64,000 bases of DNA, taken from IMG/VR virus record IMGVR_UViG_3300028558_000016, positions 124,001 through 188,000 of that record. One strand, written 5' to 3'. This document shows positions 25,640-40,681 of this stretch, in pieces (within the stretch, counting starts at the first letter, position 1; each line of letters starts with the position of its first letter). The notes under the pieces were generated by a model. That model was not told the origin of the DNA, did no database searches, and worked only from the letters and a program-made list of their open reading frames with translations. A program made the translations under genes and the position numbers.

Positions 25640-25938
25640 AGCACATTAAGCAGTTAAACCTAAATGAGGCACACGTCGAAAGGATAAAGATGCCAATGGG
25701 CCTTTCTCATAAAGGAGATGCAATATTAGGAACAGATAAGTTCTGGATGGTATATGTTTTTCAATCTCCAGACGGAAAAAGAAGATTCAAGAGCATCAGC
25801 AACGAGGCACAGACGATGCAAAACCTTGTCAACTTGATAAGAGGCGGAACAGAAGCAAATGAAATAGCAGGAATTTTTAAGGACCAGAAAGATGCTCAGG
25901 ATCTTTTTAATGAGCTTAAATATGAACCAGAAAGATAA
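25636..25938 (+). CDS. Leader-tagged hypothetical protein (start revised)
   Basis: MKHIKQLNLNEA; ATGA overlap. Confidence 0.7.
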   Translation: MKHIKQLNLNEAHVERIKMPMGLSHKGDAILGTDKFWMVYVFQSPDGKRRFKSISNEAQTMQNLVNLIRGGTEANEIAGIFKDQKDAQDLFNELKYEPER

Positions 25939-26630
25939 TGAGACTAAAATTATTTGAAGAATTCGACGAAGACTATTTCAAAAAGACATTGGAATACTTA
26001 TTCCTCGATAAAAAATATAAGGCCAAGAGAACCGGTGAAACGGTCTTAAGCATGGGATCAACTAAGTCTTTTCCAAAAGAAGCCGTTGGCAAAACGTTCT
26101 TTGTAGAGAATGGAATTGGTTACGAATTTGAGGTAAAAGTTCTCGACGCTGAGGGCAATGCGAAGTATAGAATGATATATCCGTTTCGCGAACCTCCTTT
26201 GAAAGAATCAGTTGAATACACAAAAGAGAATCCGGTAAACGTGAATTACCCAAGAGTAATTCCTCGTGACCTATTCAATGAGGCAAAGCTTTTAAAATGC
26301 ATTGGAAAAGTAGTTCTTTATATACATGACAACGACATTCCCGAAGGTTTTGGAATGTCCTTGGATGCAAGCGGAAAAAGAAGTATAGAATCACGCGACC
26401 ATGGATTCAGCAGCAAGCCGTTCAAGATCGGACTGATGAATGATGGAAGTTTGACCATCACAAATTTAGAAATATTCATAAATGGTGTTTCTTGTGTTTT
26501 TAAGACAACATATAACAGCAAGTCTAACTGGCCCTTGTTTTTGGAATATGAATTAACCGATTACCCAGTGTTCACAGAAGAAGGAAAGTTCGATGAAGAG
26601 TTTATAGAAATAGCAAAAACGATAAAATGA
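25938..26630 (+). CDS. Leader-tagged two-domain hypothetical protein
   Basis: MRLKLFEEFDED; internal PLKES. Confidence 0.75.
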   Translation: MRLKLFEEFDEDYFKKTLEYLFLDKKYKAKRTGETVLSMGSTKSFPKEAVGKTFFVENGIGYEFEVKVLDAEGNAKYRMIYPFREPPLKESVEYTKENPVNVNYPRVIPRDLFNEAKLLKCIGKVVLYIHDNDIPEGFGMSLDASGKRSIESRDHGFSSKPFKIGLMNDGSLTITNLEIFINGVSCVFKTTYNSKSNWPLFLEYELTDYPVFTEEGKFDEEFIEIAKTIK

Positions 26631-26896
26631 ACCACATAAAACTATTTGAGGAATTCACTCTAAATGAGGTGAAGCTTAAGAAGCCAAAAGAAGCTTGGTT
26701 CAAAGAAACCAGCGATTATTGGAAGACCGTGAAGGATGCAAAGGTGATTGTCACTGACGAATATTTTTCAAACGGAGAAGGCCATTACAAGGGATATTGG
26801 AAGGACGATCCAACAAAAAAGTTTGACCTTCCAGATGTATTCTTCATGGATGCAGAACTTCAAGCATGGTTAGATAAAAATTCAAAAAAGAAATAA
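26627..26896 (+). CDS. Leader-tagged hypothetical protein
   Basis: MNHIKLFEEFTLNEV. Confidence 0.78.
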   Translation: MNHIKLFEEFTLNEVKLKKPKEAWFKETSDYWKTVKDAKVIVTDEYFSNGEGHYKGYWKDDPTKKFDLPDVFFMDAELQAWLDKNSKKK

Positions 26897-26897
26897 C

Positions 26898-27173
26898 ATG
26901 GACCACATTATCAAAAATTTCTTCGATTTCCTAAACGAAGCAGAACACAAAGCTCCGTTGGATTATACGACAATGAAGATCGGAGACACTCTCGTCAATC
27001 CAGATGGAACACCTTGGACAGAACAAGATAAATCAAAGATAGTCGTTCTCAACAAGGGAATAGCCTTAATTGAAGAAAATTTCGTTGACATAATAATTAA
27101 GACCGTTCTTGGTAAAGAAGAAAGATTCACAATCTCAAAAACGAACTTAAAAGAAATAGCAAAGAATCTGTAA
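26898..27173 (+). CDS. Leader-tagged hypothetical protein
   Basis: MDHIIKNFFDFLNEA. Confidence 0.75.
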   Translation: MDHIIKNFFDFLNEAEHKAPLDYTTMKIGDTLVNPDGTPWTEQDKSKIVVLNKGIALIEENFVDIIIKTVLGKEERFTISKTNLKEIAKNL

Positions 27174-28064
27174 ATGAAATTTGTAAAATTGTTTGAAAAT
27201 TTTCTTAATGAAGCTGAGATGTCATTTGATGATCTTCATTCCAAATTTAAAAATGCTGGAATGGAAGTAACAAAACCAATAGGCTCTCCAGAAAGAGGAA
27301 GCGGCAGAATGTTTGTTGCAATGCCTCCTGTTAATGGCATGCAATATGTTGCTGACGTTTATGACTTCAACAACGTAAAACAATTTATAGACAAATACAA
27401 AAGAATACAAAGGCACAATGACATAATAGAAAAAGTCTATAAATTCATTGAGTCTAAATACGGAAAAGAAATATGGATCATGTCAGGCGGTGGAGCTCAG
27501 CTCCAAGCATTTTATGGAAACAAGGACGGTTATTTAGCAACCCTTTATCTTGACATGGAGGATCCAAAGGATAACGACGACTTATTAGCAGCAGGAAGAG
27601 GAGATGGAAGTACATTCACTTTAACAGTTAACGGAAGCAAGAACGATAAAAATTTCAAAGATTGCCACATACCAAACGTTGAGGTTTTATATTCAAGAGA
27701 TTTATATGGTAGAAGCGACGATGACATGGAAGGATTAGAGGAATATTATGATGCTGACAACGTATTGAAATTGTTAAAGAAGAAATATCCTAAAGCAAAA
27801 TTCAAAAAACGAAAATATTACGATAAAGCCGAATGTGTGTTTCTATCGGAAGAACACGACGGAGGTTTGTTAAATTCATGGAACAGAGATTCTAATAGCT
27901 ATAATGATGGATTAGAAATAGAATTTGCTAAATTTTTAAAAGAACATGGATTAAAATGGTATTGGCATTCAGAAGAAGGACGAACTCATTGGGATGGAAT
28001 AGAGATAATTCCTACAGATTATAAAGGATACACAGAATATTATAAAAATAAATCCAAGGCATAA
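27174..28064 (+). CDS. Leader-tagged hypothetical protein
   Basis: MKFVKLFENFLNEA. Confidence 0.8.
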   Translation: MKFVKLFENFLNEAEMSFDDLHSKFKNAGMEVTKPIGSPERGSGRMFVAMPPVNGMQYVADVYDFNNVKQFIDKYKRIQRHNDIIEKVYKFIESKYGKEIWIMSGGGAQLQAFYGNKDGYLATLYLDMEDPKDNDDLLAAGRGDGSTFTLTVNGSKNDKNFKDCHIPNVEVLYSRDLYGRSDDDMEGLEEYYDADNVLKLLKKKYPKAKFKKRKYYDKAECVFLSEEHDGGLLNSWNRDSNSYNDGLEIEFAKFLKEHGLKWYWHSEEGRTHWDGIEIIPTDYKGYTEYYKNKSKA

Positions 28065-28321
28065 TGAAACACGTAAAATTATTTGAAGAATTCGATAACG
28101 AGGAACTGCTCGTTAAAGATCTCGAGAACCTTGGATGGGAATTAGCAAGCTTAGCTCCTAACACTGATCCACGTTTCACTAAGGGCGAACTCCAATTGGT
28201 GACCAATGAGCCTGACATGAAATATGAGGTTCAGGACATCAAAGGAAAACACACCGACAAGGACGTTGATGCTGAAACGAAATCAGTCCTACACAAACAT
28301 AAATTAGAGAGATTCAAATAA
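28064..28321 (+). CDS. Leader-tagged hypothetical protein
   Basis: MKHVKLFEEFDNEE. Confidence 0.78.
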   Translation: MKHVKLFEEFDNEELLVKDLENLGWELASLAPNTDPRFTKGELQLVTNEPDMKYEVQDIKGKHTDKDVDAETKSVLHKHKLERFK

Positions 28322-28584
28322 TGAAACACTTAAAGATTTTTGAAAACTTTAATGGACCTGTTTACAGCGGCGGAAACGTAACTAAGATGCCAGTGATCGG
28401 AACCATAACAACTCTTCCTATGGAGTTCGGAGATTTTAAAATAGCTGCTGGCACGGAAGAAGTAGTTGAGATCATAGATGCTCCTAACGGGAAAAAATGT
28501 TATGTATGCAACAGATGGAACAAGCCAGGAATTCCTCAGTTAGTTCACGAGGACATGGTAGAAAAATATGAGCCAAAGAAATGA
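28321..28584 (+). CDS. Leader-tagged hypothetical protein
   Basis: MKHLKIFENFN. Confidence 0.78.
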   Translation: MKHLKIFENFNGPVYSGGNVTKMPVIGTITTLPMEFGDFKIAAGTEEVVEIIDAPNGKKCYVCNRWNKPGIPQLVHEDMVEKYEPKK

Positions 28585-28946
28585 GAATAAAATTATTTGA
28601 GCAGTTTATAAATGAGGGAAGCCAAATAGAAAAGGTCCAGGATCTTTTTGAAACTGATTTCTTAGAACAGCAATTCGTAAAAGATTCGTTTGGAGAAAAC
28701 CCAGACTACGATATTGATAACGACACTACTCCATCTCCGGAAGGAGGGCTTGATAAAATAGTTTGGATTGAAATAAAAAATCCAACAGATGAAGCGAAGC
28801 AAGCCATCGATAAAGATTACAAAACTTTCGCAAAGCCGTTTGAAGAATGGGCAGCCAAACATGATTTATACAATCCGGAAATTACTACGTCTGACGACGA
28901 AGATACAGCTTCCAGCATGAGTTTCAAAATAACAATATTGAAATGA
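28581..28946 (+). CDS. Leader-tagged hypothetical protein
   Basis: MRIKLFEQFINEG. Confidence 0.78.
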   Translation: MRIKLFEQFINEGSQIEKVQDLFETDFLEQQFVKDSFGENPDYDIDNDTTPSPEGGLDKIVWIEIKNPTDEAKQAIDKDYKTFAKPFEEWAAKHDLYNPEITTSDDEDTASSMSFKITILK

Positions 28947-29305
28947 AACTAAAACTATTTGAGCAGTTCGTAAATGAGGAAAACGTGGATTTCTTTGACA
29001 TAGATCCTAAAAATCCTCCATCAACTGATGACAGCGTGAACTATGTTGCAAAACATGCAATAGGAGAACTCGTCAACTTCACGTTCAATGGCGTTAAGAT
29101 TCCTGCAATTGTCAGAGTGATCTACCACACAAACGGAAAGGTGAGATATGCAATAAGATTGATAGGAACTGACGAGAATGGAAAAGAATATTACAGCACT
29201 ATACACAACGTTGACTCCATATTCGTTGAGGACAACCTCGACCAAGACGGAAAGAGAACGATATATGACGCAGACTCGGTTGAAGATTTTGACAACTATT
29301 CATAA
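28943..29305 (+). CDS. Leader-tagged hypothetical protein (SH3-like barrel possible)
   Basis: MKLKLFEQFVNEE; HAIGELVNF.. Confidence 0.78.
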   Translation: MKLKLFEQFVNEENVDFFDIDPKNPPSTDDSVNYVAKHAIGELVNFTFNGVKIPAIVRVIYHTNGKVRYAIRLIGTDENGKEYYSTIHNVDSIFVEDNLDQDGKRTIYDADSVEDFDNYS

Positions 29306-29790
29306 TGAAACACATTAGTTTATTTGAAGCATACAAGCACGAAGAGATATTCCCATCCGAAATATTTGGAAAGGATACCGGCATGGATTGGATCTATAAG
29401 AATTGGAAGCTTCCATGCAGTCCAGAAGAAGCTGCAAATAAAGTAGACAAGTGGTCTGACGATCTTGATGTAAAATCGAAAGCAGAAAAAGCTGGAGGAG
29501 AATTGATAAAGTTCTTTCAGAAATTGGTGCACGATAATCCAGATTTGAAGGATCTTGGAGAACCCAAATCATGGTTGAACATAATTGATTTCTGTTATGG
29601 AGCAATAAGTAAGTTCAATGTTGATGACATTAAGTTCTATGCAAACCTTGATTGGAACGACAAGTTAAAATACAACATGAGCAACAGAGCATTGCAGGAC
29701 AAGATCGAATCAAAAACTAAAAGCTCCATAGGATGGGTGATGAGCCCAACTACTATCGAGAGAGTCAAAAAAGAACTAAAAATGAAATAA
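29305..29790 (+). CDS. Leader-tagged hypothetical protein
   Basis: MKHISLFEAYKHEE. Confidence 0.75.
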   Translation: MKHISLFEAYKHEEIFPSEIFGKDTGMDWIYKNWKLPCSPEEAANKVDKWSDDLDVKSKAEKAGGELIKFFQKLVHDNPDLKDLGEPKSWLNIIDFCYGAISKFNVDDIKFYANLDWNDKLKYNMSNRALQDKIESKTKSSIGWVMSPTTIERVKKELKMK

Positions 29791-30557
29791 TGAAATACAT
29801 AAAGCTATTCGAAAACTGGATGAACGAAGCGTTTTACCTTGAAGGTTTCAAACAAAACATGAAATCTAAAGTAGAAGGAAACATCGACCAATACATAGAC
29901 TTTGATGAGCCGGCAAACCTTTATTATGTGAAGATTCCGTATGATAAAATAAAGGGAGATGCTGCTGAAGTCATTTCGCCTTATGTTGACGGAAAATATC
30001 CTAAGTGTAAATCAGCAAGACTCGATGCAGACAAGCAAGAAGTTTCTATGGTTTTCACAAACGAGTCAAAGAATAACGATGACATTAAAGTTAATGATGT
30101 GGTTCGTTTAAAAACTGATCAATCTTACGAAGGTAAAAAAGGAGTTGTTGAATCGATTGATGGTGATACTGCAATGGTAAATTGGGGTGACCGTCTTGGA
30201 GATTGGGAGTCTAAAAACAAAAAAGTCACACCTCATAAATTAAATACTTTGATCAGCAATGGTCAACGTGTAACTGAAGCAGAAGAAAAGATCGACCTCA
30301 AAGCAAAGTTCCCAGAATTAGTCGCTGCTTTAGAAAAAGCAAAGGTTCCATGCAAGGTTAAATTATTGGATGCTCCTCACAGCGAGATTGTTGTGGAATG
30401 TGGCTGGGATTATCCAGACAGCATATTCGACAAAGTCGACAAGGCAGCAAATTCTGTAGGATTAAATACAAGCAATAACGTTAATGTGTGCGCTGATCAA
30501 TCCGGCGGAACTGTTGTAGATTCTAAAAGAATAGCAGGCGGACCAAAAAGATATTAA
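29790..30557 (+). CDS. Leader-tagged three-domain protein including a KOW/SH3-like domain (start revised)
   Basis: MKYIKLFENWMNEA; internal FTNES and RVTEA; IKVNDVVRL....EGKKGVVESIDGDTAMVNW. Confidence 0.75.
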   Translation: MKYIKLFENWMNEAFYLEGFKQNMKSKVEGNIDQYIDFDEPANLYYVKIPYDKIKGDAAEVISPYVDGKYPKCKSARLDADKQEVSMVFTNESKNNDDIKVNDVVRLKTDQSYEGKKGVVESIDGDTAMVNWGDRLGDWESKNKKVTPHKLNTLISNGQRVTEAEEKIDLKAKFPELVAALEKAKVPCKVKLLDAPHSEIVVECGWDYPDSIFDKVDKAANSVGLNTSNNVNVCADQSGGTVVDSKRIAGGPKRY

Positions 30558-30559
30558 AC

Positions 30560-31267
30560 ATGAAATCTCTCCAACAATTCTGGTTTGCTTCTGCACCCAT
30601 TGATTTGGAACATAAGCAATACGTCTTAATGGATTTTCTACAAAGCGTGAAGGATGACTTCACGCTTGACGTTTTGTATCCTTGGCTCTCTGAGGTCCAG
30701 AAACAATACGCAGACCTCACAAAGTTCAAGTTTGAAAGAGATGAGATGCTTGAAAGATTCAAGAAGATAAAGAGGATAAACCTCGAAAAGATGAAGCTGG
30801 AATACGAATACGACACATCTTGGATAACAAAAGATTTTGAGGAAGTTCACAACATCATAGAATTCTCAATACCTCATCTGGAAACCTGGATGAAGAAAGG
30901 ACAACATTTCTACGATAATATTTCCAACCAGATGAAGTGGGAGACAATAGGATTGATACCAGAATATAAAGACGAGGGTTATTTCATTCTGCACATCGAT
31001 TCAAGAGACATATTCATCTACAGGTTTAAAATAGAGAACATCATTCTTGAGTCAGATAACTACTTTGGAATAACAACAGAACTCATAGATTTTTTCAATT
31101 CAAGGTTTAAAACCTATGAGGACCTTAAACGAGATTTGATAAAAAAGCATAAGGATCTTCCAGTTCCATACACCGTTTCCGTTCAGACTAAGTTCTATCC
31201 TATGAAGGAAACACTCATGCCGATAGTGAAGAGAAACGGCCTGGTATGGGTCAAAAACGGATACTAA
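30560..31267 (+). CDS. Hypothetical protein resembling a Bacteroidota conserved family
   Basis: PIDLEHKQYVLMDFLQ, IGLIPEYKDEGY, PMKETLMPIVKR. Confidence 0.65.
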   Translation: MKSLQQFWFASAPIDLEHKQYVLMDFLQSVKDDFTLDVLYPWLSEVQKQYADLTKFKFERDEMLERFKKIKRINLEKMKLEYEYDTSWITKDFEEVHNIIEFSIPHLETWMKKGQHFYDNISNQMKWETIGLIPEYKDEGYFILHIDSRDIFIYRFKIENIILESDNYFGITTELIDFFNSRFKTYEDLKRDLIKKHKDLPVPYTVSVQTKFYPMKETLMPIVKRNGLVWVKNGY

Positions 31268-31293
31268 TATATACAAAAAGAACTGATCAATCC

Positions 31294-31713
31294 ATGAAGA
31301 AAATCTTAGCATTTTTAATAGCATTCCTGTTGTCTTTTGCGACAATTTCAGAAGCACAGACTCAAACTTATTACAAGAAGTTTCAAACCGATACTTACAT
31401 TCCTTGGAAAATAACCAACGAGGGTTGTTACGGTTGCGCCTCTTTTTATTGGCTGGTGAACAGGACTTTTCTTCCATCAAACAACACATACAAGTTCGAG
31501 ATATGGTTCTACAGCAACAGCTACTATCCTAACGGAGCTTGGGCTTCCACCTATGTTCAAGGATTATACTTCAACGTCGACGGATACAATCTTTATGCTG
31601 AACCATCGTGGGTTTTATTTAAAGACAAATACACATCGAGTCTTTCCACATTCTTCACACCAAACCCAACGCCCGTCGTCAAGATGACTTGGGCATCAAT
31701 GAAAGTTTACTAA
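31294..31713 (+). CDS. Exported protein (start revised)
   Basis: MKKILAFLIAFLLSFATISEA-Q signal peptide; RATATATA upstream. Confidence 0.7.
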   Translation: MKKILAFLIAFLLSFATISEAQTQTYYKKFQTDTYIPWKITNEGCYGCASFYWLVNRTFLPSNNTYKFEIWFYSNSYYPNGAWASTYVQGLYFNVDGYNLYAEPSWVLFKDKYTSSLSTFFTPNPTPVVKMTWASMKVY

Positions 31714-31714
31714 T

Positions 31715-32065
31715 ATGAACATAGATTTTTCAAAACTTAAATTCCAGACAAACTGGGCCAGCGCAACAACGATTGTCACTCTATTGATTGGAGTCATAAC
31801 ATTGTACATGACAAACAGCGGATTGAAGAACCAAATAGATGGTCTTCAAAAGAGCAATGATGCTTTAACCAAATCGGTTGGAACTCTTGGCGAATCTGTT
31901 TCAGCATTGAAAGGTTCACAGGAAGTTACATCGAAAGCCATAGAGATATTCATGCAGAATCCTCCAGGAGAACTGAAGTACAGGATAGAGAGAATGGAAC
32001 AAAGGTTTGGCATGTCAGCCGCTGACACAACTTCCAAACCTTTCAACAATAACCATCCACATTAA
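31715..32065 (+). CDS. Single-TM coiled-coil protein (spanin/holin-like topology)
   Basis: N-terminal TM followed by heptad repeats. Confidence 0.5.
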   Translation: MNIDFSKLKFQTNWASATTIVTLLIGVITLYMTNSGLKNQIDGLQKSNDALTKSVGTLGESVSALKGSQEVTSKAIEIFMQNPPGELKYRIERMEQRFGMSAADTTSKPFNNNHPH

Positions 32066-32093
32066 AATATATACAGAAACCAACAAATATACC

Positions 32094-32480
32094 ATGGACA
32101 AAAGAGACATTGAGAAGTTAAGATTGAAGACGCAGATGAACGAGACATTACACCTCGTTGAGACATCTCCATACCAATCAATAAGACAGAATGCTGAATT
32201 GAAGCTCAAGTTTCTTCAGGAACAATACAAGGGAGCTTTTGGAGAATATTCAAAGGAACACGAGATTGCAGAAAAGGGAATGTATGAAGGAAAACCTTTT
32301 TGGGAAGTAACCGAAGCAAGAAGAAAAGACGGTGAGGTCTTCAGAACCGGAGATAAGTACATGGATGGAAATAATAAAACTTTTACCATCAAGATCATGA
32401 CCATCTCTCCTAATGGGAAGTTGATGGCAACAGCTGAAGAAGGCGGACAAATAGATCTTGGCAACGTAAAGAAAGCATAA
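32094..32480 (+). CDS. Hypothetical protein (start revised)
   Basis: ATG 20 nt after RATATATA; contains QMNE and VTEA possible cleavage sites. Confidence 0.65.
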   Translation: MDKRDIEKLRLKTQMNETLHLVETSPYQSIRQNAELKLKFLQEQYKGAFGEYSKEHEIAEKGMYEGKPFWEVTEARRKDGEVFRTGDKYMDGNNKTFTIKIMTISPNGKLMATAEEGGQIDLGNVKKA

Positions 32481-32481
32481 C

Positions 32482-32667
32482 ATGAAAAACCTAAAACTTT
32501 TTGAAGCATTCTTTGAAGAACTTTCTGAAAAGAAGGAACAACTCAGATCCAAGAAAGGAAAGTGGGAGATCATTGGACCTGAAGAGAAAGTTCCTGACGG
32601 TTGGAGAGTTATGAACGTCACAGGACTTCCTGATGGATATAAAGCAATTTGTAAAACAACTGACTAA
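32482..32667 (+). CDS. Leader-tagged small protein
   Basis: MKNLKLFEAFFEELSE. Confidence 0.75.
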   Translation: MKNLKLFEAFFEELSEKKEQLRSKKGKWEIIGPEEKVPDGWRVMNVTGLPDGYKAICKTTD

Positions 32668-33316: not shown

Positions 33317-33376
33317 TGAACTTGTTGCAGAAGCTAAGATGGGGACTCCTCATAACACAATTAATGGAAATAAGAA

Positions 33377-33955: not shown

Positions 33956-34170
33956 AGAACATAAAATTTTTCGAGAACTATCAAGAGAATGAGCTTCCAA
34001 AGAACAAGGCGATGGATGAAATCAAGGAAGCATTCCTTAGATTTATTTTAAACGGCGCAAAGATAAAATTGGAAGATGTTCAAGAGGTTCACGCATTCAA
34101 CAAGTACACAGAGATCAAGACCAAGTTTCAGACTTACAGGATCGACTACGACATAAAGATTATAGGATAA
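33952..34170 (+). CDS. Leader-tagged small protein
   Basis: MKNIKFFENYQENE. Confidence 0.72.
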   Translation: MKNIKFFENYQENELPKNKAMDEIKEAFLRFILNGAKIKLEDVQEVHAFNKYTEIKTKFQTYRIDYDIKIIG

Positions 34171-34484
34171 TGAAACACGTAAAACTATACGAGAACTTCC
34201 TTAACGAAAAAGAATTAAATCTAACCAAAGGAAAAAAATTCAAGGTTCTTAAGGACACTGAATTAACCTGGTTTGAAAACACCGGTGGATCTTCGTTTTC
34301 TCCAAAAAGCGTTGAAGTGAAAACAGGAGAAACGTTGACATATCTTGGAAATGGATTCGGCGCATTTGCTGGATCTGACGACGTGGCAGTTCCTCAATTC
34401 CAAAAAGAATCTGGAGAAAAAGGTGAACTAAAAGATACAGGAACTTGGGGACAACTTCCAACCGGAGTTCTAAAAAATATTTAA
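34170..34484 (+). CDS. Leader-tagged hypothetical protein
   Basis: MKHVKLYENFLNEK. Confidence 0.8.
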   Translation: MKHVKLYENFLNEKELNLTKGKKFKVLKDTELTWFENTGGSSFSPKSVEVKTGETLTYLGNGFGAFAGSDDVAVPQFQKESGEKGELKDTGTWGQLPTGVLKNI

Positions 34485-34485
34485 G

Positions 34486-34848
34486 ATGGCAAGAGAAATC
34501 TATATGAGGGATCCGACCGATCCGTATTTTAAGTCCGACATCATGGAAATTAATGATGAGGTTGAAATGCTCATCACTCAGATCAAGATGATTTTGTTCA
34601 CAAGACCTGGAGAAGTATTAGGAGCTCCTGATTTCGGAGTTGCATTGGAAGACCAACTGTTCACGTTCAACATAAACGAATATGCTTTGAAGTCGATGTT
34701 GTTTGACCAGGTGATAAAGTTTGTTCCTTTGTCAGAGAAGTATCACGTCAAGTTTGACATCAACTTCTCAAAGGGAACCGTTAGGGATATTTGTCTTATA
34801 GACGTTGTTATAAACGGAAATCCGTTGTTTGGAATATTAGTTAAATAA
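34486..34848 (+). CDS. Baseplate wedge / sheath initiator, GPW-gp25 family
   Basis: QIKMILFTRPGEVLGAPDFGVALEDQLF. Confidence 0.85.
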   Translation: MAREIYMRDPTDPYFKSDIMEINDEVEMLITQIKMILFTRPGEVLGAPDFGVALEDQLFTFNINEYALKSMLFDQVIKFVPLSEKYHVKFDINFSKGTVRDICLIDVVINGNPLFGILVK

Positions 34849-34850
34849 TT

Positions 34851-35075
34851 ATGAAAAACCTAAAACATTTTGACGAGCTAAACGAAGGGCATTCAAGAAT
34901 GATTCTTCCTGACCTTGCTAACTTATCAAACAACTCTCAATTGACTAATGAATTGGCAAACATCCTTGCTGAAAAGTTGGATGAAGCTGAATTCAGAAAA
35001 TTACAGGATTGGTTGAGACTCGCAAAGTCTCAAATGAATACTAAGATACAACAAGCCTCAAGAAAATTCCACTAA
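34851..35075 (+). CDS. Leader-tagged small protein
   Basis: MKNLKHFDELNEG. Confidence 0.72.
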   Translation: MKNLKHFDELNEGHSRMILPDLANLSNNSQLTNELANILAEKLDEAEFRKLQDWLRLAKSQMNTKIQQASRKFH

Positions 35076-35076
35076 T

Positions 35077-35535
35077 ATGAAACACATCCAACCATTAAAC
35101 GAAGCTCTGCAACAAAGAGCATTGGAATTAATCCTAAGAGGGTTGAAGCAAACAGGCGACAACAAGGAAGCTTATTTTTATATAGAGGAAGATCTTTATG
35201 GAAATGAAGCCGATGAGGTTGCTGCTTTTCTTGGATGGCTCGAAGAAACAGGAAAACACATAGGAAGCGGAAATGCTAAATCAACATACGACGAATTCAA
35301 AAAGACCATCAAGCCTGCTGACTTTAAAAAGCACAGCGTGATGAACATGAAAACCAAGCACGAAGAGAAAAGAAACGAGAGAATGATCGCTGATCAGCAA
35401 TTAAAGAAGGGCGACAAGGTTTACATACAAAAAGAAGTCACATCGACGTTTTATACAACACACGAAATCATCAGCACTGATCCTAAGAACAATACAATAA
35501 CCATAAAATTGTCTGATCCATTTAAAACAACATAA
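35077..35535 (+). CDS. Leader-tagged hypothetical protein
   Basis: MKHIQPLNEA; C-terminal LKKGDKVYI barrel. Confidence 0.7.
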   Translation: MKHIQPLNEALQQRALELILRGLKQTGDNKEAYFYIEEDLYGNEADEVAAFLGWLEETGKHIGSGNAKSTYDEFKKTIKPADFKKHSVMNMKTKHEEKRNERMIADQQLKKGDKVYIQKEVTSTFYTTHEIISTDPKNNTITIKLSDPFKTT

Positions 35536-35543
35536 TTTAAAAC

Positions 35544-36125
35544 ATGGCCACAAAGATAAAAAGAAAAATTCTCAATTTTGGGGATTTTAAAAAAGGAAAG
35601 AACATCCTTCAGACCGCTGAAAAGCAGCATCCTATTAAAGATGAATCTGTAAAAGAGTCTGTGAACGAAACAGAAAAAGTTTCTAACGAAAAAGAGGCTG
35701 AAGACTGGTTTTTAAAGAACCATGAAGGAAGCGTGACTTGCGTTAAGGACGGAAAAGAACAAACTGTCGGAAGTTATCCTGAAGCAGTTGAATTCTTCAA
35801 GAGCGATGCAGTCGAAGAAGCTAAGAAAGAAAAAGCTCCAAAGGAAGCTTCCATATTCAAGAGAAACATTCTCGATTTCAAGAAATTCAAGGATGGCAAA
35901 GACTCTGTTCAAAAGGAAAAGGTTAAGCCCATAAAAGAAAATCAAACTATCGTTGATGGCAAGGAAAGAGTGTTTGACGAATTCAAAGACAAGAAAGAAT
36001 TCACAACACAGGAATTGTGTGCTGCATTGAAGAAGGAATATCCTGACTCATTAGCTGGCGACATCAGTGACATGGCAGATACTTTGTCAAGAGCTTTGGA
36101 AAATTACAAAAACCCAGGTGAGTAA
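35544..36125 (+). CDS. Charged protein with duplicated leader-like motif (possible prohead core component)
   Basis: KRKILNFGDFKKGK and KRNILDFKKFKDGK; VKES, VNET, VEEA, IKEN sites. Confidence 0.6.
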   Translation: MATKIKRKILNFGDFKKGKNILQTAEKQHPIKDESVKESVNETEKVSNEKEAEDWFLKNHEGSVTCVKDGKEQTVGSYPEAVEFFKSDAVEEAKKEKAPKEASIFKRNILDFKKFKDGKDSVQKEKVKPIKENQTIVDGKERVFDEFKDKKEFTTQELCAALKKEYPDSLAGDISDMADTLSRALENYKNPGE

Positions 36126-36403
36126 TGAAACATATTAAATTATTCGAAGAAATGAACGAATCAGATGCGCCAAGCGACGAATTGGTCAAGGGCAACGTAT
36201 ACAAGATATACGACAGGAAGCAAAACGGCAAGCTCATTTACAGGGCTGCAAGGTTTGATGGTCCAGATGCTCAAGGAAACAAGTTCTGTTTGGTCAACTT
36301 TCCAAAGGAAAAATTTGAATGGTTCAAGAAGGACGGCATGGACTCGTTGTATCTGGTCAAGATAGATTGGAAACCCGAGTCGGAATACAAGAAAAAGAAA
36401 TAA
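36125..36403 (+). CDS. Leader-tagged hypothetical protein
   Basis: MKHIKLFEEMNES. Confidence 0.8.
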   Translation: MKHIKLFEEMNESDAPSDELVKGNVYKIYDRKQNGKLIYRAARFDGPDAQGNKFCLVNFPKEKFEWFKKDGMDSLYLVKIDWKPESEYKKKK

Positions 36404-36427
36404 AGTTAACAATTACATAATAATCTG

Positions 36428-36454
36428 AAGCCCGTTTATACGAACGGGCTTTTT
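36428..36454 (+). terminator. Intrinsic terminator
   Basis: AAGCCCGTT/AACGGGCTT plus T run. Confidence 0.85.
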
Positions 36455-36492
36455 CTTTTACGAATATATAAGTAAATAGAAGTCTTTAAATA

Positions 36493-38253
36493 ATGGCAAC
36501 CACCTCAACAAATAGCACACCGTCACTCGTCATGTTCCAGAAGAGCAGACTTGCGATAGAGCTTCTCATAAAGGATACGATCGAATATACGGTAACGACT
36601 TTCAAGCAAGGAAGAACAAACTTCACCGTGGCTTCTGCCTATGGTCAGATCATATTCGTTACGCAAAACATCGCACAGCTCATACTATATTACATCGAAG
36701 ATTCCATCACGGAATTAAACATAAGAACTGCGACAAGGTCAAACTCAGTTTATGGAATTGCTACTCTTGCAGGGCACAATCCAACAAGAGCTGTTGGTGC
36801 AACCGGCGAGATAAGTCTTCTTGCAAAGAATCCAGGAACTACAGACATCCCAAGCGGAATAGTCGTAATTCCTAACTTCACAAAGATCAAGTGTAAGAAC
36901 AACGGATTGGATTACATCATAGATCTTCCAACTGACGACATAAGAGTTTCTGCAAACGGAAACAATAACGGAATATCGATGGGAATAATTCAAGGAACCA
37001 TTGAGACCCAGACGTTCACAGGAACTGGAGAGCCTCTTCAATCCGTAAGTGCAAGCATTCAACAGACCGCATTGGTAGATAACTTCTTCGTAAACGTTTA
37101 TGTGAACGGAGAGAAGTGGAAGAAGTATGATTCGATTTATGACATTCCAAGAAATGGAAAAGGTTACATAATCAAAAATGGCATCACAAGCGGAATAGAC
37201 GTTTTCTTTGGTAACACAAACTTTGGATTACAACCAGTATTAGGTGCAGAAATAAACGTTGAGTATCTTGTTACATCAGGTCAAACTGGAAACATAACTC
37301 TCACCGATACTGAGGAAGCTCTTTACGAATGGACCGACACAGGCTTCACGATATTCGGAGATGACGTTGACTTGAACGAAACTTTCTTGATCAAGAACGT
37401 TAACGCACCAGATTTTGGAACAAATCCAGAACCTCTCGCATTGACGAGACTCGTTGCTCCTAAAGTTTCGAGAAGCTTGGTTCTTGCAAATCCAGACAAC
37501 TACATAATTTTCTTTGAGAAGTTTAATTTATTTTCCATCATAGACGCGTTCTCAACTCCAGGAGACAACAACATAGATGACGACAACGTGATCTACGTAT
37601 TTTTAATTCCAGATGTTAGAAAGAGAATGAAGAGCAACGAGAATTATTTCACCATCGAAGAAAGCAGATTTGTTTTAAGCACTAACCAAAAGAATAAAGT
37701 TCTTGATTACATCGAGAGAAGCGGTTCAAAGATCGTTACGACTATCGTGACTTTGATAGATCCTGTTTTCAGCAGATACGTGATTAACATTGCGTTGATC
37801 ATCTTTCAAGGACACTCAGAAGAGAGCATCAGACAGGCAGTGTTGCAAAGGCTTTCCGATTACTTCATTCAGATAAGAAGAAGAGACAGAATACCAAGAT
37901 CGGATTTAATTTCAATAATAGAAGGAATTGATGGAATTGACACAGTCAACATCAGCATAGTTTCAGAAAGAGATGAGCTTGATTTCATAAAATGGAGCGA
38001 GCTTACCGATGCACAAAAGCTTACGATACCTCAACCGACTCCAACAGCGTTGGACGAGTTTGGAGACATCATAATCAAGCAGAGGGATCTTCCAATAATC
38101 AAAGGTGGTTGGGACGATAGAAGAGGAATCACTTATGAGACTGGAATAAACGAGGATAAACCTTCTGCAGTTAATATAATAATAAAAGACGTTGTTCCAA
38201 AGACTTACAACACGGATTTTAATGCCAACACAAAATCAGATCTTAGGGGATAA
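36493..38253 (+). CDS. Baseplate wedge protein (T4 gp6 / baseplate J-like)
   Basis: ELNIRTATRSNSVYGIATLAGHNPTRA, VYVNGEKW, VFFGNTNFG..P..GAEINVEYL.TSG..GN. Confidence 0.8.
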   Translation: MATTSTNSTPSLVMFQKSRLAIELLIKDTIEYTVTTFKQGRTNFTVASAYGQIIFVTQNIAQLILYYIEDSITELNIRTATRSNSVYGIATLAGHNPTRAVGATGEISLLAKNPGTTDIPSGIVVIPNFTKIKCKNNGLDYIIDLPTDDIRVSANGNNNGISMGIIQGTIETQTFTGTGEPLQSVSASIQQTALVDNFFVNVYVNGEKWKKYDSIYDIPRNGKGYIIKNGITSGIDVFFGNTNFGLQPVLGAEINVEYLVTSGQTGNITLTDTEEALYEWTDTGFTIFGDDVDLNETFLIKNVNAPDFGTNPEPLALTRLVAPKVSRSLVLANPDNYIIFFEKFNLFSIIDAFSTPGDNNIDDDNVIYVFLIPDVRKRMKSNENYFTIEESRFVLSTNQKNKVLDYIERSGSKIVTTIVTLIDPVFSRYVINIALIIFQGHSEESIRQAVLQRLSDYFIQIRRRDRIPRSDLISIIEGIDGIDTVNISIVSERDELDFIKWSELTDAQKLTIPQPTPTALDEFGDIIIKQRDLPIIKGGWDDRRGITYETGINEDKPSAVNIIIKDVVPKTYNTDFNANTKSDLRG

Positions 38254-39125
38254 TGAAATTAGAATGCGTAATAATTTGCATCAATTACAGTGACTTCTTG
38301 AGCCACACATTACCATCCAACAAATCTCTTTGCGACAGGATTGTCGTAGTGACCGACGCAAAGGACACAAAAACAAAAACAGTCTGCGAGTTTTGGAACG
38401 TGCAATGCGTTCAAACGGATGACGTGTATCAGAACGGCTCGAAGATTCCCAACAAGGGAATTGCAATAAATAAAGGACTTGAAGTATTGTCTAAAAGCGA
38501 TTGGGTCCTTCACATGGACGCAGACGTTTTTCTTCTTCCTCTCACTCGACAAATTCTTGAGAGAATGACTTTAGAAAAAGACAGCTTGTATGGAACCGAC
38601 AGGATGATGTGCGAGTCCTATGAGGATTGGCATTACTTCCTTCACCCAACAACAGAGGCAAAATCTTTGCATGAGGGTTGGATATACCTTCACATGGACA
38701 GATTTAAAATAGGAACAAGACTCGTGCAATACCACGAGGGAGGATATTGGCCTATTGGATATTTTCAATTGTGGAATCCAAAAGGAAGCGGAGTGTTCGA
38801 TTATCCAGTTGAAGGAGTTGGATTCGACAGAACAGACGTCGTTCATCTGAAGAGATGGGAATCAAGCAAAAGAAGATTCATTCCTGATTTCGTTGTTGTT
38901 CACCTATCAAACGAATCACACGGACAAGGACAGAATTGGCATGGAAGAAAAACGAGAATGTTTGAGCCAGAGTTTCAAACAAACCTGGTGAAGGGAATAA
39001 AAAACTTCTTTGGAAAAATCAAAGAGAAGATAAAGAAATTCATCAAGAAGAAAGAAACAAAGATAGAACATAAGCCGAAGAAGGAAGTAAAAAAAGAAGA
39101 GCCACCAAAAGGATATGCCACTTAA
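38253..39125 (+). CDS. GT-A fold glycosyltransferase (family 2-like)
   Basis: VIICINYSDFL, IVVVTD, NKGIAINKGL, WVLHMDADV, GYFQL. Confidence 0.8.
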   Translation: MKLECVIICINYSDFLSHTLPSNKSLCDRIVVVTDAKDTKTKTVCEFWNVQCVQTDDVYQNGSKIPNKGIAINKGLEVLSKSDWVLHMDADVFLLPLTRQILERMTLEKDSLYGTDRMMCESYEDWHYFLHPTTEAKSLHEGWIYLHMDRFKIGTRLVQYHEGGYWPIGYFQLWNPKGSGVFDYPVEGVGFDRTDVVHLKRWESSKRRFIPDFVVVHLSNESHGQGQNWHGRKTRMFEPEFQTNLVKGIKNFFGKIKEKIKKFIKKKETKIEHKPKKEVKKEEPPKGYAT

Positions 39126-39360
39126 AAAATCATTATACGAGGTCACAGAACATTCACGTGACAACATACTCAACAAGGGATTCGATTATAAAGGAAAGAT
39201 ATTCGAGAAGACCATGTCGACTTTTCTATTTAAGGAAGAAAGAAGAGCAAACATCCTCGGATTTCTCGAAGACGTTTATTATGAATTGATCCAAAGAGTC
39301 AAGACCATAAAGACGTTTTACGATTACGCCAAGAAGAAAAATTATCGTGACTTCAACTAA
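39115..39360 (+). CDS. Small hypothetical protein (possibly baseplate-associated)
   Basis: 81 aa ORF between wedge genes. Confidence 0.55.
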   Translation: MPLKKSLYEVTEHSRDNILNKGFDYKGKIFEKTMSTFLFKEERRANILGFLEDVYYELIQRVKTIKTFYDYAKKKNYRDFN

Positions 39361-39446
39361 TGGTCCTGATCAAATGGGGATATTGTGACGTCAATCCTAT
39401 AGTTCAAGCGCTTGAACATTTTTATAAATTAAGAAAACGAAATTAG

Positions 39447-39454
39447 TATATTTG
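39447..39454 (+). promoter_or_regulatory. Bacteroidota-type -7 promoter box
   Basis: TATATTTG 4 nt before ATG 39459. Confidence 0.55.
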
Positions 39455-39458
39455 TAGT

Positions 39459-39983
39459 ATGAAACACATCAAACTATTTGAAGAACAAACAACCCACAGC
39501 AAGATTCTTTTCTTACATGGTCTTGATTCAAGACCTTATGAGGACAGACTTGCAATATTAAAGGAAACAGGCGCAGAAGTATTTGCTCCACACATCAACT
39601 ACAGGCAAGAAGACGAAACTTCAATTGCAGAAGACATCATCGAAAAAGAAGGAATAACTCATCTAATAGGACACTCATTGGGTGGAATACTTTCTTTCTA
39701 CCTTTCAAACAAACACAAGCTTCCTGCATTGATGTTCAACCCTGCATTTGGATCCATCAACAGAAAATATTTTGAGGAGATAAGAGAGCTTCAACAATAT
39801 CCTCCATTTGAAGAACAATACGCTGTCGTAGGTTTAAAGGACACAGTCATTCCTCCGGATGTTCAATTGGCAGGATTAAAACACGCACACGTGTTTGAAG
39901 AACCAGAAATGCCTCACACTATAGAACCAAAGCTATTTAAGAAGTACGTTGAATTATTTTCGGAAAAAACCAACATCAAGTGA
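39459..39983 (+). CDS. Leader-tagged alpha/beta hydrolase (YqiA/YcfP-like esterase)
   Basis: MKHIKLFEEQ; LFLHGLDS, IGHSLGG, LMFNPA, G.KDTVI, MPH. Confidence 0.85.
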   Translation: MKHIKLFEEQTTHSKILFLHGLDSRPYEDRLAILKETGAEVFAPHINYRQEDETSIAEDIIEKEGITHLIGHSLGGILSFYLSNKHKLPALMFNPAFGSINRKYFEEIRELQQYPPFEEQYAVVGLKDTVIPPDVQLAGLKHAHVFEEPEMPHTIEPKLFKKYVELFSEKTNIK

Positions 39984-40681
39984 AACACATAAAAGATTAT
40001 AACAAATTATTCGAGAACGAAAAGCCAATCATATCTTACGATTTTGACGGGTGTCTTCACGTTTCTGTTGTTGGACACGATCCAATTAACTTCACAGATC
40101 CTGAATCATGGGTTCCATTTACAGAGATGCACGAACAAATGAGAGAGGATGCAAAGACTCACACCATCGTCATTTGCACGGCAAGACCTCCTGAAACCGA
40201 AGTTTACGTTCAAGAATTTCTTGACATGTACAAGCTTCCGGTTGAAAAGATTTACGCAACAAACAATTTTCCAAAGACTCCTCTTCTCGTTGAGATTGGA
40301 GCCATAAAACATTACGACGACAACACTGGGCTCATTGAACCTTTACATAAAGCAGGAATAGAATTCGTTCTCGTCAACCCGTTCAACAGAACTCAACAGG
40401 TAATGGAAGGTGAAATACCTTTAAAAAATTACTTGATAACATTCATAAACGATAAGTTTTACATATCAGACAACACCATCAAAGCGTTCTTAGACAGGCT
40501 GGTTAAGCTTGACCCACACATGACGCATGACCCAAGAAGCGATGGAAAAGGAAAAAATTCAAGAGGAATAGTGATTAGAAGCGCAGCATTGAGTCAGCCT
40601 GACATCAAGGATTTATTTCCAGAATTCACCAAGAAGTATGATTGGTTGAAGATGGAGGTCGTAGCCACCAAATATATGTAG
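39980..40681 (+). CDS. Leader-tagged HAD-family phosphatase
   Basis: GTG start MKHIKDYNKLFENE; ISYDFDGCL, ICTAR, HYDDN. Confidence 0.8.
   Translation: MKHIKDYNKLFENEKPIISYDFDGCLHVSVVGHDPINFTDPESWVPFTEMHEQMREDAKTHTIVICTARPPETEVYVQEFLDMYKLPVEKIYATNNFPKTPLLVEIGAIKHYDDNTGLIEPLHKAGIEFVLVNPFNRTQQVMEGEIPLKNYLITFINDKFYISDNTIKAFLDRLVKLDPHMTHDPRSDGKGKNSRGIVIRSAALSQPDIKDLFPEFTKKYDWLKMEVVATKYM

What the first reader, a model, noticed from the sequence alone, without database searches (positions are those of the whole stretch)
25938..40681. Tagged proteins look like protease-processed polyproteins
Seen: several tagged ORFs carry a second hydrophobic-x-E-(A/S/G) site at an apparent domain boundary. Examples are PLKE/S (25938), FTNE/S and RVTE/A (29790), SLNE/A (33377) and QVME/G (39980); HLEE/G also occurs in 13137, outside this span. 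In 33377 the part after SLNE/A resembles a small domain that I recognise as a stand-alone phage protein. Inference: one tag carries 2-3 cargo domains that the prohead protease then separates.
Basis: inference. Interest (0 to 1): 0.6.

Follow-up and report, generated by a model that had tools for sequence, protein, structure and literature searches.

The report
Modular capsid cargo with protease-site junctions
In a 482-kb phage, several proteins that carry a T4-like capsid-targeting leader are chains of 2-3 independent modules, and the joints carry the Leu/Ile-x-Glu signal expected for the phage's head protease, so one leader probably delivers several cargo pieces, though no cleavage has been shown.

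Summary
All six sites are present. All lie at module boundaries that I set independently, by homology or AlphaFold models; the boundary in 39980 is the least well established.

Comparative evidence supports the idea more than the counts do.
- The C-terminal modules of 33377, 25938, 29790 and 13137 each occur in relatives directly behind the leader.
- In 33377, 25938 and 13137 our internal site aligns with the relative's leader junction. An example is relative FLNE|ADRSIKDIAA against our SLNE|ADRSIKDIAA.
- The RVTE|A site of 29790 sits at a fixed offset that is kept in at least 13 of 28 multi-module homologues.

The genome encodes a T4-type S77 prohead protease fused to 13 repeats, each holding YLAE|N. 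Next to it is a gp23-type capsid protein whose N-terminus holds MINE|, IIE| and SLNE|.

[LIM]-x-E is specifically depleted in the 68 tagged proteins: observed/expected (O/E) 0.73 against 1.13 in untagged ones. This suggests that tagged proteins meet that protease.

Cleavage at the joints, and what happens to the fragments, remain inferred. Three sites have a non-canonical residue at P3 (Val twice, Thr once). Verdict: partly supported, and a new variant of the T4 CTS/internal-protein system.

The parts
25938..26630 (+). Tagged ORF of 230 aa. Leader MRLKLFEEFDE, then an orphan N-module (residues about 12-82), a linker (83-90), and a C-module (about 91-230).
   Evidence: Sequence. The C-module is a stand-alone family. 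AlphaFold: residues 83-90 below pLDDT 50, residues 95-230 high.
26199..26210 (+). Junction L88-K89-E90|S91 (PLKE|S) in 25938.
   Evidence: It aligns with the leader end KLFE| of relative P0126, which reads MKHVKKFKLFE|YAEENPVNMNY, against our PLKE|SVEYTKENPVNVNY. It lies in the low-confidence linker.
29790..30557 (+). Tagged ORF of 255 aa. Leader (1-13), module 1 (14-92), module 2 (93-163, weak KOW-like hit), module 3 (about 165-255).
   Evidence: P0261 is leader plus module 1 only. P0245 is leader plus modules 1 and 3. P0254 is leader plus modules 2 and 3. P0251 is leader plus module 3.
30057..30068 (+). Junction T90-N91-E92|S93 (FTNE|S) in 29790. P3 is Thr, which is non-canonical.
   Evidence: It lies at the end of the last strand of module 1 (E84-90), where mean pLDDT drops from 94 to 55. 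P0261 ends ...IVFTND. The P0254 leader junction reads FINE|SYKNND.
30270..30281 (+). Junction V161-T162-E163|A164 (RVTE|A) in 29790.
   Evidence: It follows a stretch (147-162) with pLDDT below 50, ahead of helix 170-183. The same offset holds LSE, ISE, LNE, VNE, INE, VSE or MTE in at least 13 of 28 multi-module homologues.
33377..33955 (+). Tagged ORF of 192 aa. Leader (1-13), an orphan N-module with an acidic tail (14-109), and a C-module (110-192).
33695..33706 (+). Junction L107-N108-E109|A110 (SLNE|A) in 33377. It is the only internal [LIM]xE in this protein.
   Evidence: Relatives P0006 and P0005 carry the leader directly on the domain. P0006 reads MKHVKLFEGFLNE|ADRSIKDIAA, against our SLNE|ADRSIKDIAA. 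The probable capsid-protein maturation site, HSLNE43|S, has the same four residues.
39980..40681 (+). Tagged ORF of 233 aa with a GTG start. Leader VKHIKDYNKLFENE, a HAD-phosphatase-like part (about 15-140, with the DFDG motif), and an orphan C-module (144-233).
   Evidence: No relatives beyond one contig.
40400..40411 (+). Junction V141-M142-E143|G144 (QVME|G) in 39980.
   Evidence: The 65%-identical relative in L007 has TMSE|A at the matching place, then 10 extra residues ending in PVNE|D before the shared LKNYLITF.
13137..13544 (+). Leader (1-13), an acidic low-complexity spacer (14-58), and a basic helical C-module (59-135).
13302..13313 (+). Junction L56-E57-E58|G59 (HLEE|G) in 13137. It is the only internal [LIM]xE in this protein.
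   Evidence: Relatives carry a variant leader, MNNIPSFDDFVLE|GLVLE|A, directly on the homologous domain.
23415..44259 (+). Array of about 25 ORFs that begin with the leader MKHIKLFE.F(L)NE, interleaved with baseplate genes. Starts: 23415, 23753, 25636 (the leader Met inside the ORF called at 25576), 25938, 26627, 26898, 27174, 28064, 28321, 28581, 28943, 29305, 29790, 32482, 32667, 33059, 33377, 34170, 35077, 36125, 39459, 39980, 43978.
   Evidence: Leader codons vary synonymously and the upstream DNA is not conserved. Baseplate J-like protein at 36493.

Best explanation
The window lies in a 482-kb T4-related jumbo phage. About 68 of its proteins begin with a shared 13-residue leader, MKHIKLFE.FLNE. 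I read this leader as a counterpart of the T4 capsid-targeting sequence MKTYQEFIAE. On this reading, it takes a protein into the prohead core and is then cut off after Glu by the gp21-type (S77) prohead protease.

Some tagged genes have grown by fusing or inserting further autonomous modules at the leader-cargo joint. Each joint kept the last three residues of a leader junction, or an equivalent, in the form (L/I/V)-x-E followed by a small residue.

Tagged proteins are otherwise purged of L/I/M-x-E. A site of this kind left in an exposed linker is therefore likely to be cut inside the prohead. One leader would then bring in two or three modules that end up as separate polypeptides.

Shown here:
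- the modular build of the proteins;
- the module boundaries;
- the homology of most joints to leader junctions, and a conserved junction offset for another;
- the protease and capsid genes;
- the depletion of L/I/M-x-E.

Inferred:
- that the leader targets proteins to the capsid;
- that the internal sites are cleaved, most likely SLNE|A in 33377, PLKE|S in 25938 and HLEE|G in 13137;
- that the released pieces stay in the head as cargo.
For: Protease and its likely substrates:
- An S77 prohead protease is encoded. It is fused to 13 tandem units of 14 aa, each with Y-L-A-E|N.
- A gp23-type capsid gene lies next to it. Its N-terminus reads MKMINE|Q...PIIE|S...HSLNE43|S.
- T4 precedents: CTS MKTYQEFIAE; Alt is cut at ITE-6 and LTE-619.

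Leader:
- It is conserved as a peptide, with free synonymous variation.

Junction homology:
- 33377.
- 25938.
- 29790.
- 13137.
- 39980.

Boundaries:
- Confirmed by AlphaFold models.

Depletion of the protease-type site:
- [LIM]xE has O/E 0.73 (95% CI 0.60-0.85) in tagged proteins, against 1.13 in small untagged ones. No shuffle out of 300 and no random set out of 5000 reached a value as low.
- Controls are not depleted: LIM-x-D 1.24, LIM-x-Q 1.25, LIM-E 0.94, LIM-xx-E 0.99, E-x-LIM 1.03.
- The same trend holds inside three domain families that have both tagged and untagged members.

Leader copies inside other ORFs:
- Near-complete copies with no start codon occur at window positions 141435 and 352001.
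Against: - There is no proteomic or biochemical evidence for this phage or any relative.
- Three of the six sites have Val or Thr at P3, whereas the inferred protease sites all have Leu or Ile.
- Apart from h-x-E, the internal sites do not resemble the leader. They rank between 638 and 32,940 of 134,263 positions in a leader PSSM scan.
- T4 internal proteins are reported to be cut only once.
- Sixty-eight capsid-targeted proteins would be without precedent.
- Part of the junction conservation may be shared descent within one clade that carries the GTLK pre-sequence.
Confidence: 0.5

Rival explanations
1. Fusion relics that are not processed. The multi-module proteins arose when neighbouring tagged genes fused. 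The internal h-x-E is only what remains of the downstream leader, or is the native end of a module. Only the N-terminal leader is removed, and the protein stays in one piece, as T4 internal proteins do.
For: - The internal leader copy in the protein at window position 141435 matches that protein's own N-terminal leader at 20 of 21 nucleotides, so it looks like a recent event.
- FTNE is the natural C-terminus of module 1 (P0261 ends ...VFTND).
- T4 internal proteins are cut once.
- The motif is not enriched.
Against: - Only the h-x-E part of the former leader is kept while the rest decays, and it is kept at a fixed offset in front of different upstream modules.
- Tagged proteins are purged of [LIM]xE. 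An exposed linker copy should therefore either be cut or have been removed by selection.
- In 33377 and 13137 the junction is the only internal [LIM]xE in the protein.
Confidence: 0.25
2. Long propeptides rather than polyproteins. The internal sites are cut, but the N-terminal module together with the leader is a long propeptide. It would serve for targeting, as a chaperone, or to neutralise charge, and would be degraded and expelled. Only the C-terminal module would be cargo, as in phiKZ and SPN3US.
For: [quoted passage not shown]
- The N-terminal part of 13137 is an acidic spacer ahead of a basic domain.
- The N-modules of 33377 and 25938 have no relatives (only the C-terminal part of 25938 found homologues).
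- Close relatives lack these N-modules.
Against: - Module 1 of 29790 exists alone behind a leader (P0261) and in other proteins.
- The N-terminal part of 39980 looks like a HAD-type enzyme.
- Folded N-modules contain few further [LIM]xE sites that would break them into small pieces.
Confidence: 0.15
3. The leader has nothing to do with the capsid or the protease. It could be a signal for some other location or for translation. The internal sites would then be chance matches to a loose motif in Glu-rich linkers.
For: - About one motif match per 220 residues is expected by chance.
- Linkers are rich in E, S, G and A.
- No publication mentions this leader.
Against: - The depletion is specific to [LIM]xE in its exact spacing and residue, and is confined to tagged proteins.
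- The last seven leader residues, FENFLNE, resemble YQEFIAE of the T4 CTS.
- The scaffold repeats and the capsid-protein N-terminus carry the same L/I-x-E.
- The junctions align with leader ends in relatives.
Confidence: 0.1

Closest known systems
[quoted passage not shown]
   Same: A short conserved N-terminal leader sits on otherwise unrelated small proteins. The leader ends aromatic-(I/L)-x-E. The genome encodes an S77 protease and a gp23-type capsid protein. The cargo set differs between close relatives.
   Different: There are about 68 tagged genes, against a handful in T4. The leader is 13 residues, MKHIKLFE.FLNE. Several cargo proteins have more than one module, with extra L/I/V-x-E joints, whereas T4 internal proteins are reported to be cut once. 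The protease is fused to a repeat scaffold.
T4 Alt, processed at both ends (ITE-6 and LTE-619)
   Same: A capsid-packaged protein is cut by the same protease type at more than one h-x-E site, which releases a sizeable second piece.
   Different: Alt loses a C-terminal peptide of 63 residues with no known independent role. Here the pieces are autonomous domains that occur as separate genes in relatives.
Head and ejection proteins of phiKZ, 201phi2-1 and SPN3US, processed by S80 proteases
   Same: Jumbo phages with many internal head proteins, cleavage after Glu in a three-residue motif, and several cuts per substrate.
   Different: Their protease family is S80 and the motif is A/S/G-x-E, not L/I-x-E. 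Their N-terminal regions are treated as propeptides that leave the head. They have no shared short leader across dozens of genes.
Viral polyproteins, and the herpesvirus and phage protease-scaffold fusions
   Same: One translation product carries protease sites between its units. The protease gene here is itself fused to a scaffold-like repeat region that is punctuated by sites.
   Different: Polyproteins of RNA viruses encode essential replication or structural proteins. Here the units are small accessory cargo modules that are shuffled between relatives.

Membership tests
T4-type CTS cargo processed by a gp21-family (S77) prohead protease | The genome encodes an S77 prohead protease. | tested here: met
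   PF03420 match of 30.8 bits (cut-off 27) at G000:69867-70217(-). The ORF has 681 aa, with the protease domain at its N-terminus.
T4-type CTS cargo processed by a gp21-family (S77) prohead protease | A gp23-type major capsid protein with an N-terminal region that carries protease sites. | tested here: met
   PF07068, E = 6.5e-44. MINE6, IIE18 and SLNE43 all lie ahead of the point where the family match starts, about residue 76.
T4-type CTS cargo processed by a gp21-family (S77) prohead protease | A short N-terminal leader shared by otherwise unrelated proteins and conserved at the peptide level. | tested here: met
   About 68 ORFs. Leader codons vary synonymously and the upstream DNA is not conserved.
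T4-type CTS cargo processed by a gp21-family (S77) prohead protease | The leader ends in (L/I)-x-E. | tested here: met
   31 canonical 13-residue leaders end in E, mostly as FLNE. Nearly all also contain K-L-F-E at residues 5-8. Some leaders lack the second site, for example 39459.
T4-type CTS cargo processed by a gp21-family (S77) prohead protease | The proteins are packaged in the head and the leader is removed there. | not testable with these tools
   The only indirect support is the specific depletion of [LIM]xE in tagged proteins.
Protease-processed polyprotein | Two or more autonomous domains in one ORF. | tested here: met
   Homologues that carry single modules and AlphaFold models. For 39980 the support is only one weak family match and an indel. 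The N-terminal part of 13137 is a spacer, not a domain.
Protease-processed polyprotein | A recognition site of the cognate protease at every junction. | tested here: inconclusive
   L at P3 in 33377, 25938 and 13137. V or T at P3 in 29790 (two sites) and in 39980. The inferred substrate sites all have L or I. V-x-E is only weakly depleted, at O/E 0.84.
Protease-processed polyprotein | The junctions are cleaved and the products persist. | not testable with these tools
   This needs virion proteomics or an in vitro cleavage assay.
Long propeptides of the phiKZ/SPN3US type (S80 protease) | An S80 protease with an A/S/G-x-E motif. | tested here: not met
   The protease matches S77. The inferred motif is L/I-x-E.

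The most novel reading that the evidence does not exclude
A dsDNA phage runs a combinatorial cargo-cassette system. Dozens of small effector modules are shuffled behind one capsid-targeting leader. Prohead-protease sites act as punctuation between them. A single leader therefore co-packages several unrelated modules in fixed ratio and frees them as separate proteins for injection. The whole cargo set has been purged of stray protease sites. This would be a polyprotein strategy inside a phage head, spread across a clade of uncultured jumbo phages with variant leaders.
Probability: 0.35. Interest if true: 0.75.

Novelty: new variant of a known kind. Interest (0 to 1): 0.6.

Why it matters
If the joints are cut, this phage clade has turned the T4 capsid-targeting system into a modular delivery platform. 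The leader would mark about 10% of its genes as injected cargo, which makes them likely early-acting host-takeover or anti-defence factors. The junction sites would mark the limits of each functional unit, which helps annotation in a genome made mostly of orphan genes.

The depletion of L/I/M-x-E offers a sequence-only way to tell which proteins of an uncultured phage meet the head protease. It also hints at what that protease recognises.

The leader and the sites could also be useful for engineering protein packaging, as was done with the T4 CTS.

Tried and rejected
Searches that found nothing useful:
- Megablast of the span against GenBank phages: no match.
- Relatives of the N-module of 33377: none by word search.
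- 29790 in viral contigs and by tblastn against phages: none. The exhaustive representative search was needed.
- 39980: no hit by tblastn against phages. One relative contig in the viral and metagenome scans. No usable hit in the ESM Atlas or by PDB sequence search. Whether its two parts occur independently could not be tested.
- Foldseek of the 29790 model against the PDB: no match at E ≤ 0.001, so the module functions stay unknown.
- No paper mentions the leader sequence.

Analyses with negative results:
Those joints keep only h-x-E. The scan did find two much better internal leader copies elsewhere.
- In-genome paralogues of the sub-domains: none beyond leader matches.

Reading rejected:
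- That the leader is a DNA-level repeat or regulatory element. The codons vary synonymously and the upstream DNA is not conserved.

Technical note:
- My strict leader regex found few leaders in the clade that is about 46% identical. One search showed this was a false negative, because that clade uses a variant leader, MNNIPSFDDFVLE.

Not run: sequencing-read tools and complex prediction, because neither bears on proteolysis.


Full report
**Setting.** The window is bases 124001-188000 of a 482,156-bp IMG/VR virus record. It has no near relative among GenBank phages. The genome encodes a T4-type prohead protease (Pfam Peptidase_S77, above the curated cut-off). Next to it lies a gp23-type major capsid protein (PF07068, E = 6.5e-44). 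Within the window, the tagged genes are interleaved with baseplate genes, including a Baseplate_J-like protein at 36493. Other genes in the window include a PIF1/Dda-like helicase, an S1-domain protein, an amidoligase, a GT2 glycosyltransferase and PhoH.

**The tag.** About 68 ORFs genome-wide begin with MKHIKLFE.F(L)NE or a close variant. About 25 of them lie in the window.
- The codons vary freely at synonymous positions. For example, Leu6 uses TTA 14 times, CTA 14, CTT 7, TTG 4 and CTG once.
- The upstream DNA is not conserved. Selection therefore acts on the peptide.
- The last seven residues, FENFLNE, resemble YQEFIAE of the T4 capsid-targeting sequence MKTYQEFIAE. That sequence is removed by gp21 after Glu.
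- No paper in the library contains the leader.

**The observation.** All six sites are present, once each:

| ORF | Site |
|---|---|
| 25938 | PLKE90\|S |
| 29790 | FTNE92\|S |
| 29790 | RVTE163\|A |
| 33377 | SLNE109\|A |
| 39980 | QVME143\|G |
| 13137 | HLEE58\|G |

As a count, the motif is no more frequent than chance. [LIVMF]xE[ASG] occurs 38 times in the tagged proteins beyond residue 16, against 32.4±5.2 in composition-preserving shuffles. That is 0.46 per 100 aa, against 0.38 in untagged proteins. About one hit per 220 residues is expected anyway. The same five proteins also carry hits inside folded domains: LFNE115|A (invariant across its family), DIPE136|G and GVVE121|S.

**Are the sites at module boundaries?** Yes, by evidence that does not depend on the motif.

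- **33377.**
  - Residues 111-185 match the C-terminal half of phrog_13953.
  - Residues 110-192 hit 79 phage records and 260 proteins, most of them stand-alone and 75-85 aa long.
  - The syntenic gene in close relative L002 (neighbouring genes 82-96% identical) has 96 aa: the leader directly followed by this domain. L003 is the same.
  - The junctions can be superimposed. P0006 reads MKHVKLFEGFLNE|ADRSIKDIAA, and ours reads ...DESLNE|ADRSIKDIAA.
  - The 93-residue N-module has no detectable relatives.

- **25938.**
  - Residues about 91-230 belong to a family of 558 proteins that normally start MN.NY.RVIPRDLFNEAK.
  - Annotated stand-alone genes occur in Rhizobium and Erythrobacter phages, starting at our residues 88-90.
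  - Tagged relatives carry the leader directly. P0126 reads MKHVKKFKLFE|YAEENPVNMNY, and ours reads PLKE|SVEYTKENPVNVNY. P0127, P0132 and P0125 are similar.
  - In the AlphaFold model, residues 83-90 have pLDDT below 50, between the last strand of the N-module and a confident C-domain.

- **29790.**
  - An exhaustive HMMER search gave partial-length matches that define three modules.
  - Module 1 (residues 1-92) occurs alone behind a leader. P0261 has 91 aa and ends ...IVFTND.
  - Module 3 (about 165-255) occurs as dozens of proteins of 80-90 aa.
  - P0245 (76% identical) is leader plus modules 1 and 3, with no module 2. P0254 is leader plus modules 2 and 3. P0251 is leader plus module 3.
  - In the AlphaFold model, modules 1 and 3 have pLDDT above 90. 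Both sites lie where confidence drops.

- **39980.**
  - Residues 10-140 match a HAD-type polynucleotide kinase/phosphatase family, and a DFDG motif follows the leader.
  - The only relative (65% identical) has TMSE|A at the matching place, then 10 extra residues ending in PVNE|D before the shared C-module.
  - I could not test whether the two parts occur independently.

- **13137.**
  - The site ends an acidic, low-complexity stretch.
  - Relatives in the clade that is about 46% identical carry a variant leader, MNNIPSFDDFVLE|GLVLE|A, directly on the homologous domain.

**Junction conservation.** For module 3, I projected the start of the domain onto every homologue with an N-terminal extension of 35 residues or more.
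- An h-x-E lies at a fixed offset, about 10 residues ahead of the first helix, in at least 13 of 28 homologues. The triplets are LNE, VNE, INE, VSE, MTE, LSE and ISE.
- This holds whatever lies upstream: the leader itself, or unrelated modules. P0249 keeps a longer relic, SFDEFLNE|A.
- Untagged stand-alone members simply start with Met at the helix.
- Part of this pattern is shared ancestry in a sub-clade with a GTLK pre-sequence. The upstream partners differ, however, so the joint has survived repeated shuffling.

**What the protease probably recognises.** Two sets of likely substrates are available.
- The protease ORF (681 aa) continues into 13 tandem units of 14 residues. Each unit holds Y-(L/I)-(A/S)-E followed by N, K or T, with sites every 14 residues from 303 to 471. 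This looks like a scaffold built to be cut into 14-residue pieces, much as T4 gp22 is cut into short fragments.
- The capsid protein begins MKMINE|Q...PIIE|S...HSLNE43|SSS, ahead of the point where the gp23 family match starts.

Taken together with the leader (FLNE| and KLFE|), these point to (L/I)-x-E, as in T4, where the known sites are IAE, ITE and LTE. SLNE|A of 33377 has the same four residues as the probable capsid maturation site.

**A new piece of evidence: tagged proteins avoid the site.**
- Beyond residue 14, [LIM]-x-E occurs 88 times in the 68 tagged proteins, against 120.5±9.6 expected. That is O/E 0.73, bootstrap 95% CI 0.60-0.85.
- No shuffle out of 300 was as low. No random set of 68 small untagged proteins, out of 5000, was as low.
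- Untagged proteins show O/E 1.15 overall, and 1.13 for those of 250 aa or fewer.
- The effect is specific to this spacing and this residue. The controls are LIM-x-D 1.24, LIM-x-Q 1.25, LIM-E 0.94, LIM-xx-E 0.99 and E-x-LIM 1.03.
- It holds both inside the window (0.71) and outside it (0.74).
- Within three domain families that have both tagged and untagged members, tagged members carry fewer [LIM]xE inside the shared domain: 0.2 against 0.78; 0.69 against 1.26 (p = 0.016); 0.58 against 0.93 (p = 0.08).
- At the first helix of the 33377-C family, 53 of 116 untagged members have [LIM]xE. None of the 5 tagged members does; they have Asp or Val there.

This is what one expects if tagged proteins are exposed to an L/I-x-E protease. 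It also raises the weight of the few sites that remain. In 33377 and 13137 the junction is the only internal [LIM]xE. In 25938 it is one of two.

A PSSM of the leader, scanned across all internal positions, did not flag the six sites; they keep only h-x-E. It did find near-complete internal leader copies that have no start codon.
- In the tagged protein at window position 141435, residues 106-118 read VKFEKQFEGFLSE|A. This copy matches the protein's own N-terminal leader at 20 of 21 nucleotides.
- In the ORF at window position 352001, residues 57-69 read EKHIKPFENFLNE|K.

These show that tagged units do fuse in frame.

**Interpretation.** The modular build, the boundaries, the junction homology, the protease and the site depletion are all shown. 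Three things are inferred: that the leader targets proteins to the capsid, that the joints are cut, and that the pieces remain as cargo.
- I rate cleavage as likely at SLNE|A, PLKE|S and HLEE|G, which have Leu at P3.
- I rate it as uncertain at RVTE|A and QVME|G. These have Val at P3, although relatives have Leu, Ile or Met there.
- I rate it as doubtful at FTNE|S. It has Thr at P3, and it is the native C-terminus of module 1.
- The word "polyprotein" fits 29790 best, because every module is seen behind a leader elsewhere. It may also fit 39980, where an enzyme is joined to a second domain.
- In 13137 the N-terminal part is an acidic spacer, which is closer to a propeptide.
- For 33377 and 25938, the orphan N-modules could be either cargo or long propeptides of the SPN3US kind.

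**Comparison and novelty.** The system works like the T4 CTS/internal-protein system, and it meets every sequence-level criterion of that system that I could test. It differs in scale (about 68 genes), in having multi-module cargo with retained joints, and in having a protease fused to a repeat scaffold. Cutting a head protein at several sites is already known, from T4 Alt, gp22 and the gp23 propeptide, and from phiKZ and SPN3US. What appears to be undescribed is autonomous cargo domains strung behind one leader. I class the finding as a new variant of a known kind.

Noticed in passing
outside the window: G000:C1:68283-70328 (-), window position about -55717 to -53672; locus L001: The S77 prohead protease is fused to 13 tandem units of 14 aa (consensus about SEYLAENVDKSISY). 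Each unit holds Y-L-A-E|N. It looks like a scaffold with built-in cut sites every 14 residues.
   Followed up: partly
outside the window: G000:C1:66728-68251 (-); locus L045: The gp23-type major capsid protein has three (L/I)-x-E sites in its first 43 residues (MINE6, IIE18, SLNE43) and only three more in the remaining 464.
   Followed up: partly
genome-wide, 68 tagged ORFs (27 of them in the window): [LIM]-x-E is specifically depleted in tagged proteins (O/E 0.73, against 1.13 in untagged), while LIM-x-D and LIM-x-Q are raised. F-x-E is enriched in tagged proteins (O/E 1.51, 53 against 35), which I cannot explain.
   Followed up: yes
outside the window: G000:C1:265435-266001 (+) and 476001-476417 (+): Two ORFs hold a near-complete copy of the leader in frame with no start codon: VKFEKQFEGFLSE|A at residue 106, and EKHIKPFENFLNE|K at residue 57. 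These are clear in-frame fusions of tagged units. The second ORF has no leader at its own N-terminus.
   Followed up: partly
outside the window: G000:C1:220549-220971 (+): A tagged protein of 140 aa ends in a leader-like sequence, LKKIKDFEDFINGEETK, just before its stop codon. This may be the remnant of a downstream gene's leader.
   Followed up: no
loci L049-L057 (about 1440-2200 in most), relatives with a baseplate protein about 46% identical: A larger clade of uncultured phages uses a variant leader, M(N/K)N(I/L)P(S/T)(F/Y)(D/E)DF(V/I)LE|(G/S)L(V/I)LE|A, with two tandem h-L-E sites. The leader system is therefore wider than the MKHIKLFE form. My first regex missed it.
   Followed up: partly
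locus L048, open frame of 542 aa around 1501-1743: A long open frame repeats a leader-like segment (MNEKFIQNSDPIEDLRIG, then HEKFTEDSDPIYDLGIG). It also contains ESLNE|G and DFLNE|N between segments. This may be a larger polyprotein-like arrangement with a different leader type.
   Followed up: no
window 39459-39983 (+): This tagged alpha/beta-hydrolase (UPF0227/esterase-like, E = 7e-8) has a leader, MKHIKLFEEQTTH, that lacks the second LNE site and runs straight into the first strand. If this leader is cut, the cut must follow KLFE.
   Followed up: no
window 25576-25938 (+): The first ATG gives a basic extension of 20 residues ahead of a variant leader, MKHIKQLNLNE. The true start is probably the internal Met at about 25636.
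   Followed up: no
window 29790-29828 and the AlphaFold model of 29790: In the model, the leader is the start of one long helix (residues 2-25) that continues into module 1. Its pLDDT is only 56-71, so whether the LNE|A bond is exposed is unclear.
   Followed up: no
window 11725-13107, 18813-19937, 21638-23062, 38253-39125, 44266-45036: Non-tagged neighbours include a PIF1/Dda-like helicase, a multi-S1-domain protein, an amidoligase-like protein, a GT2 glycosyltransferase and PhoH.
   Followed up: partly
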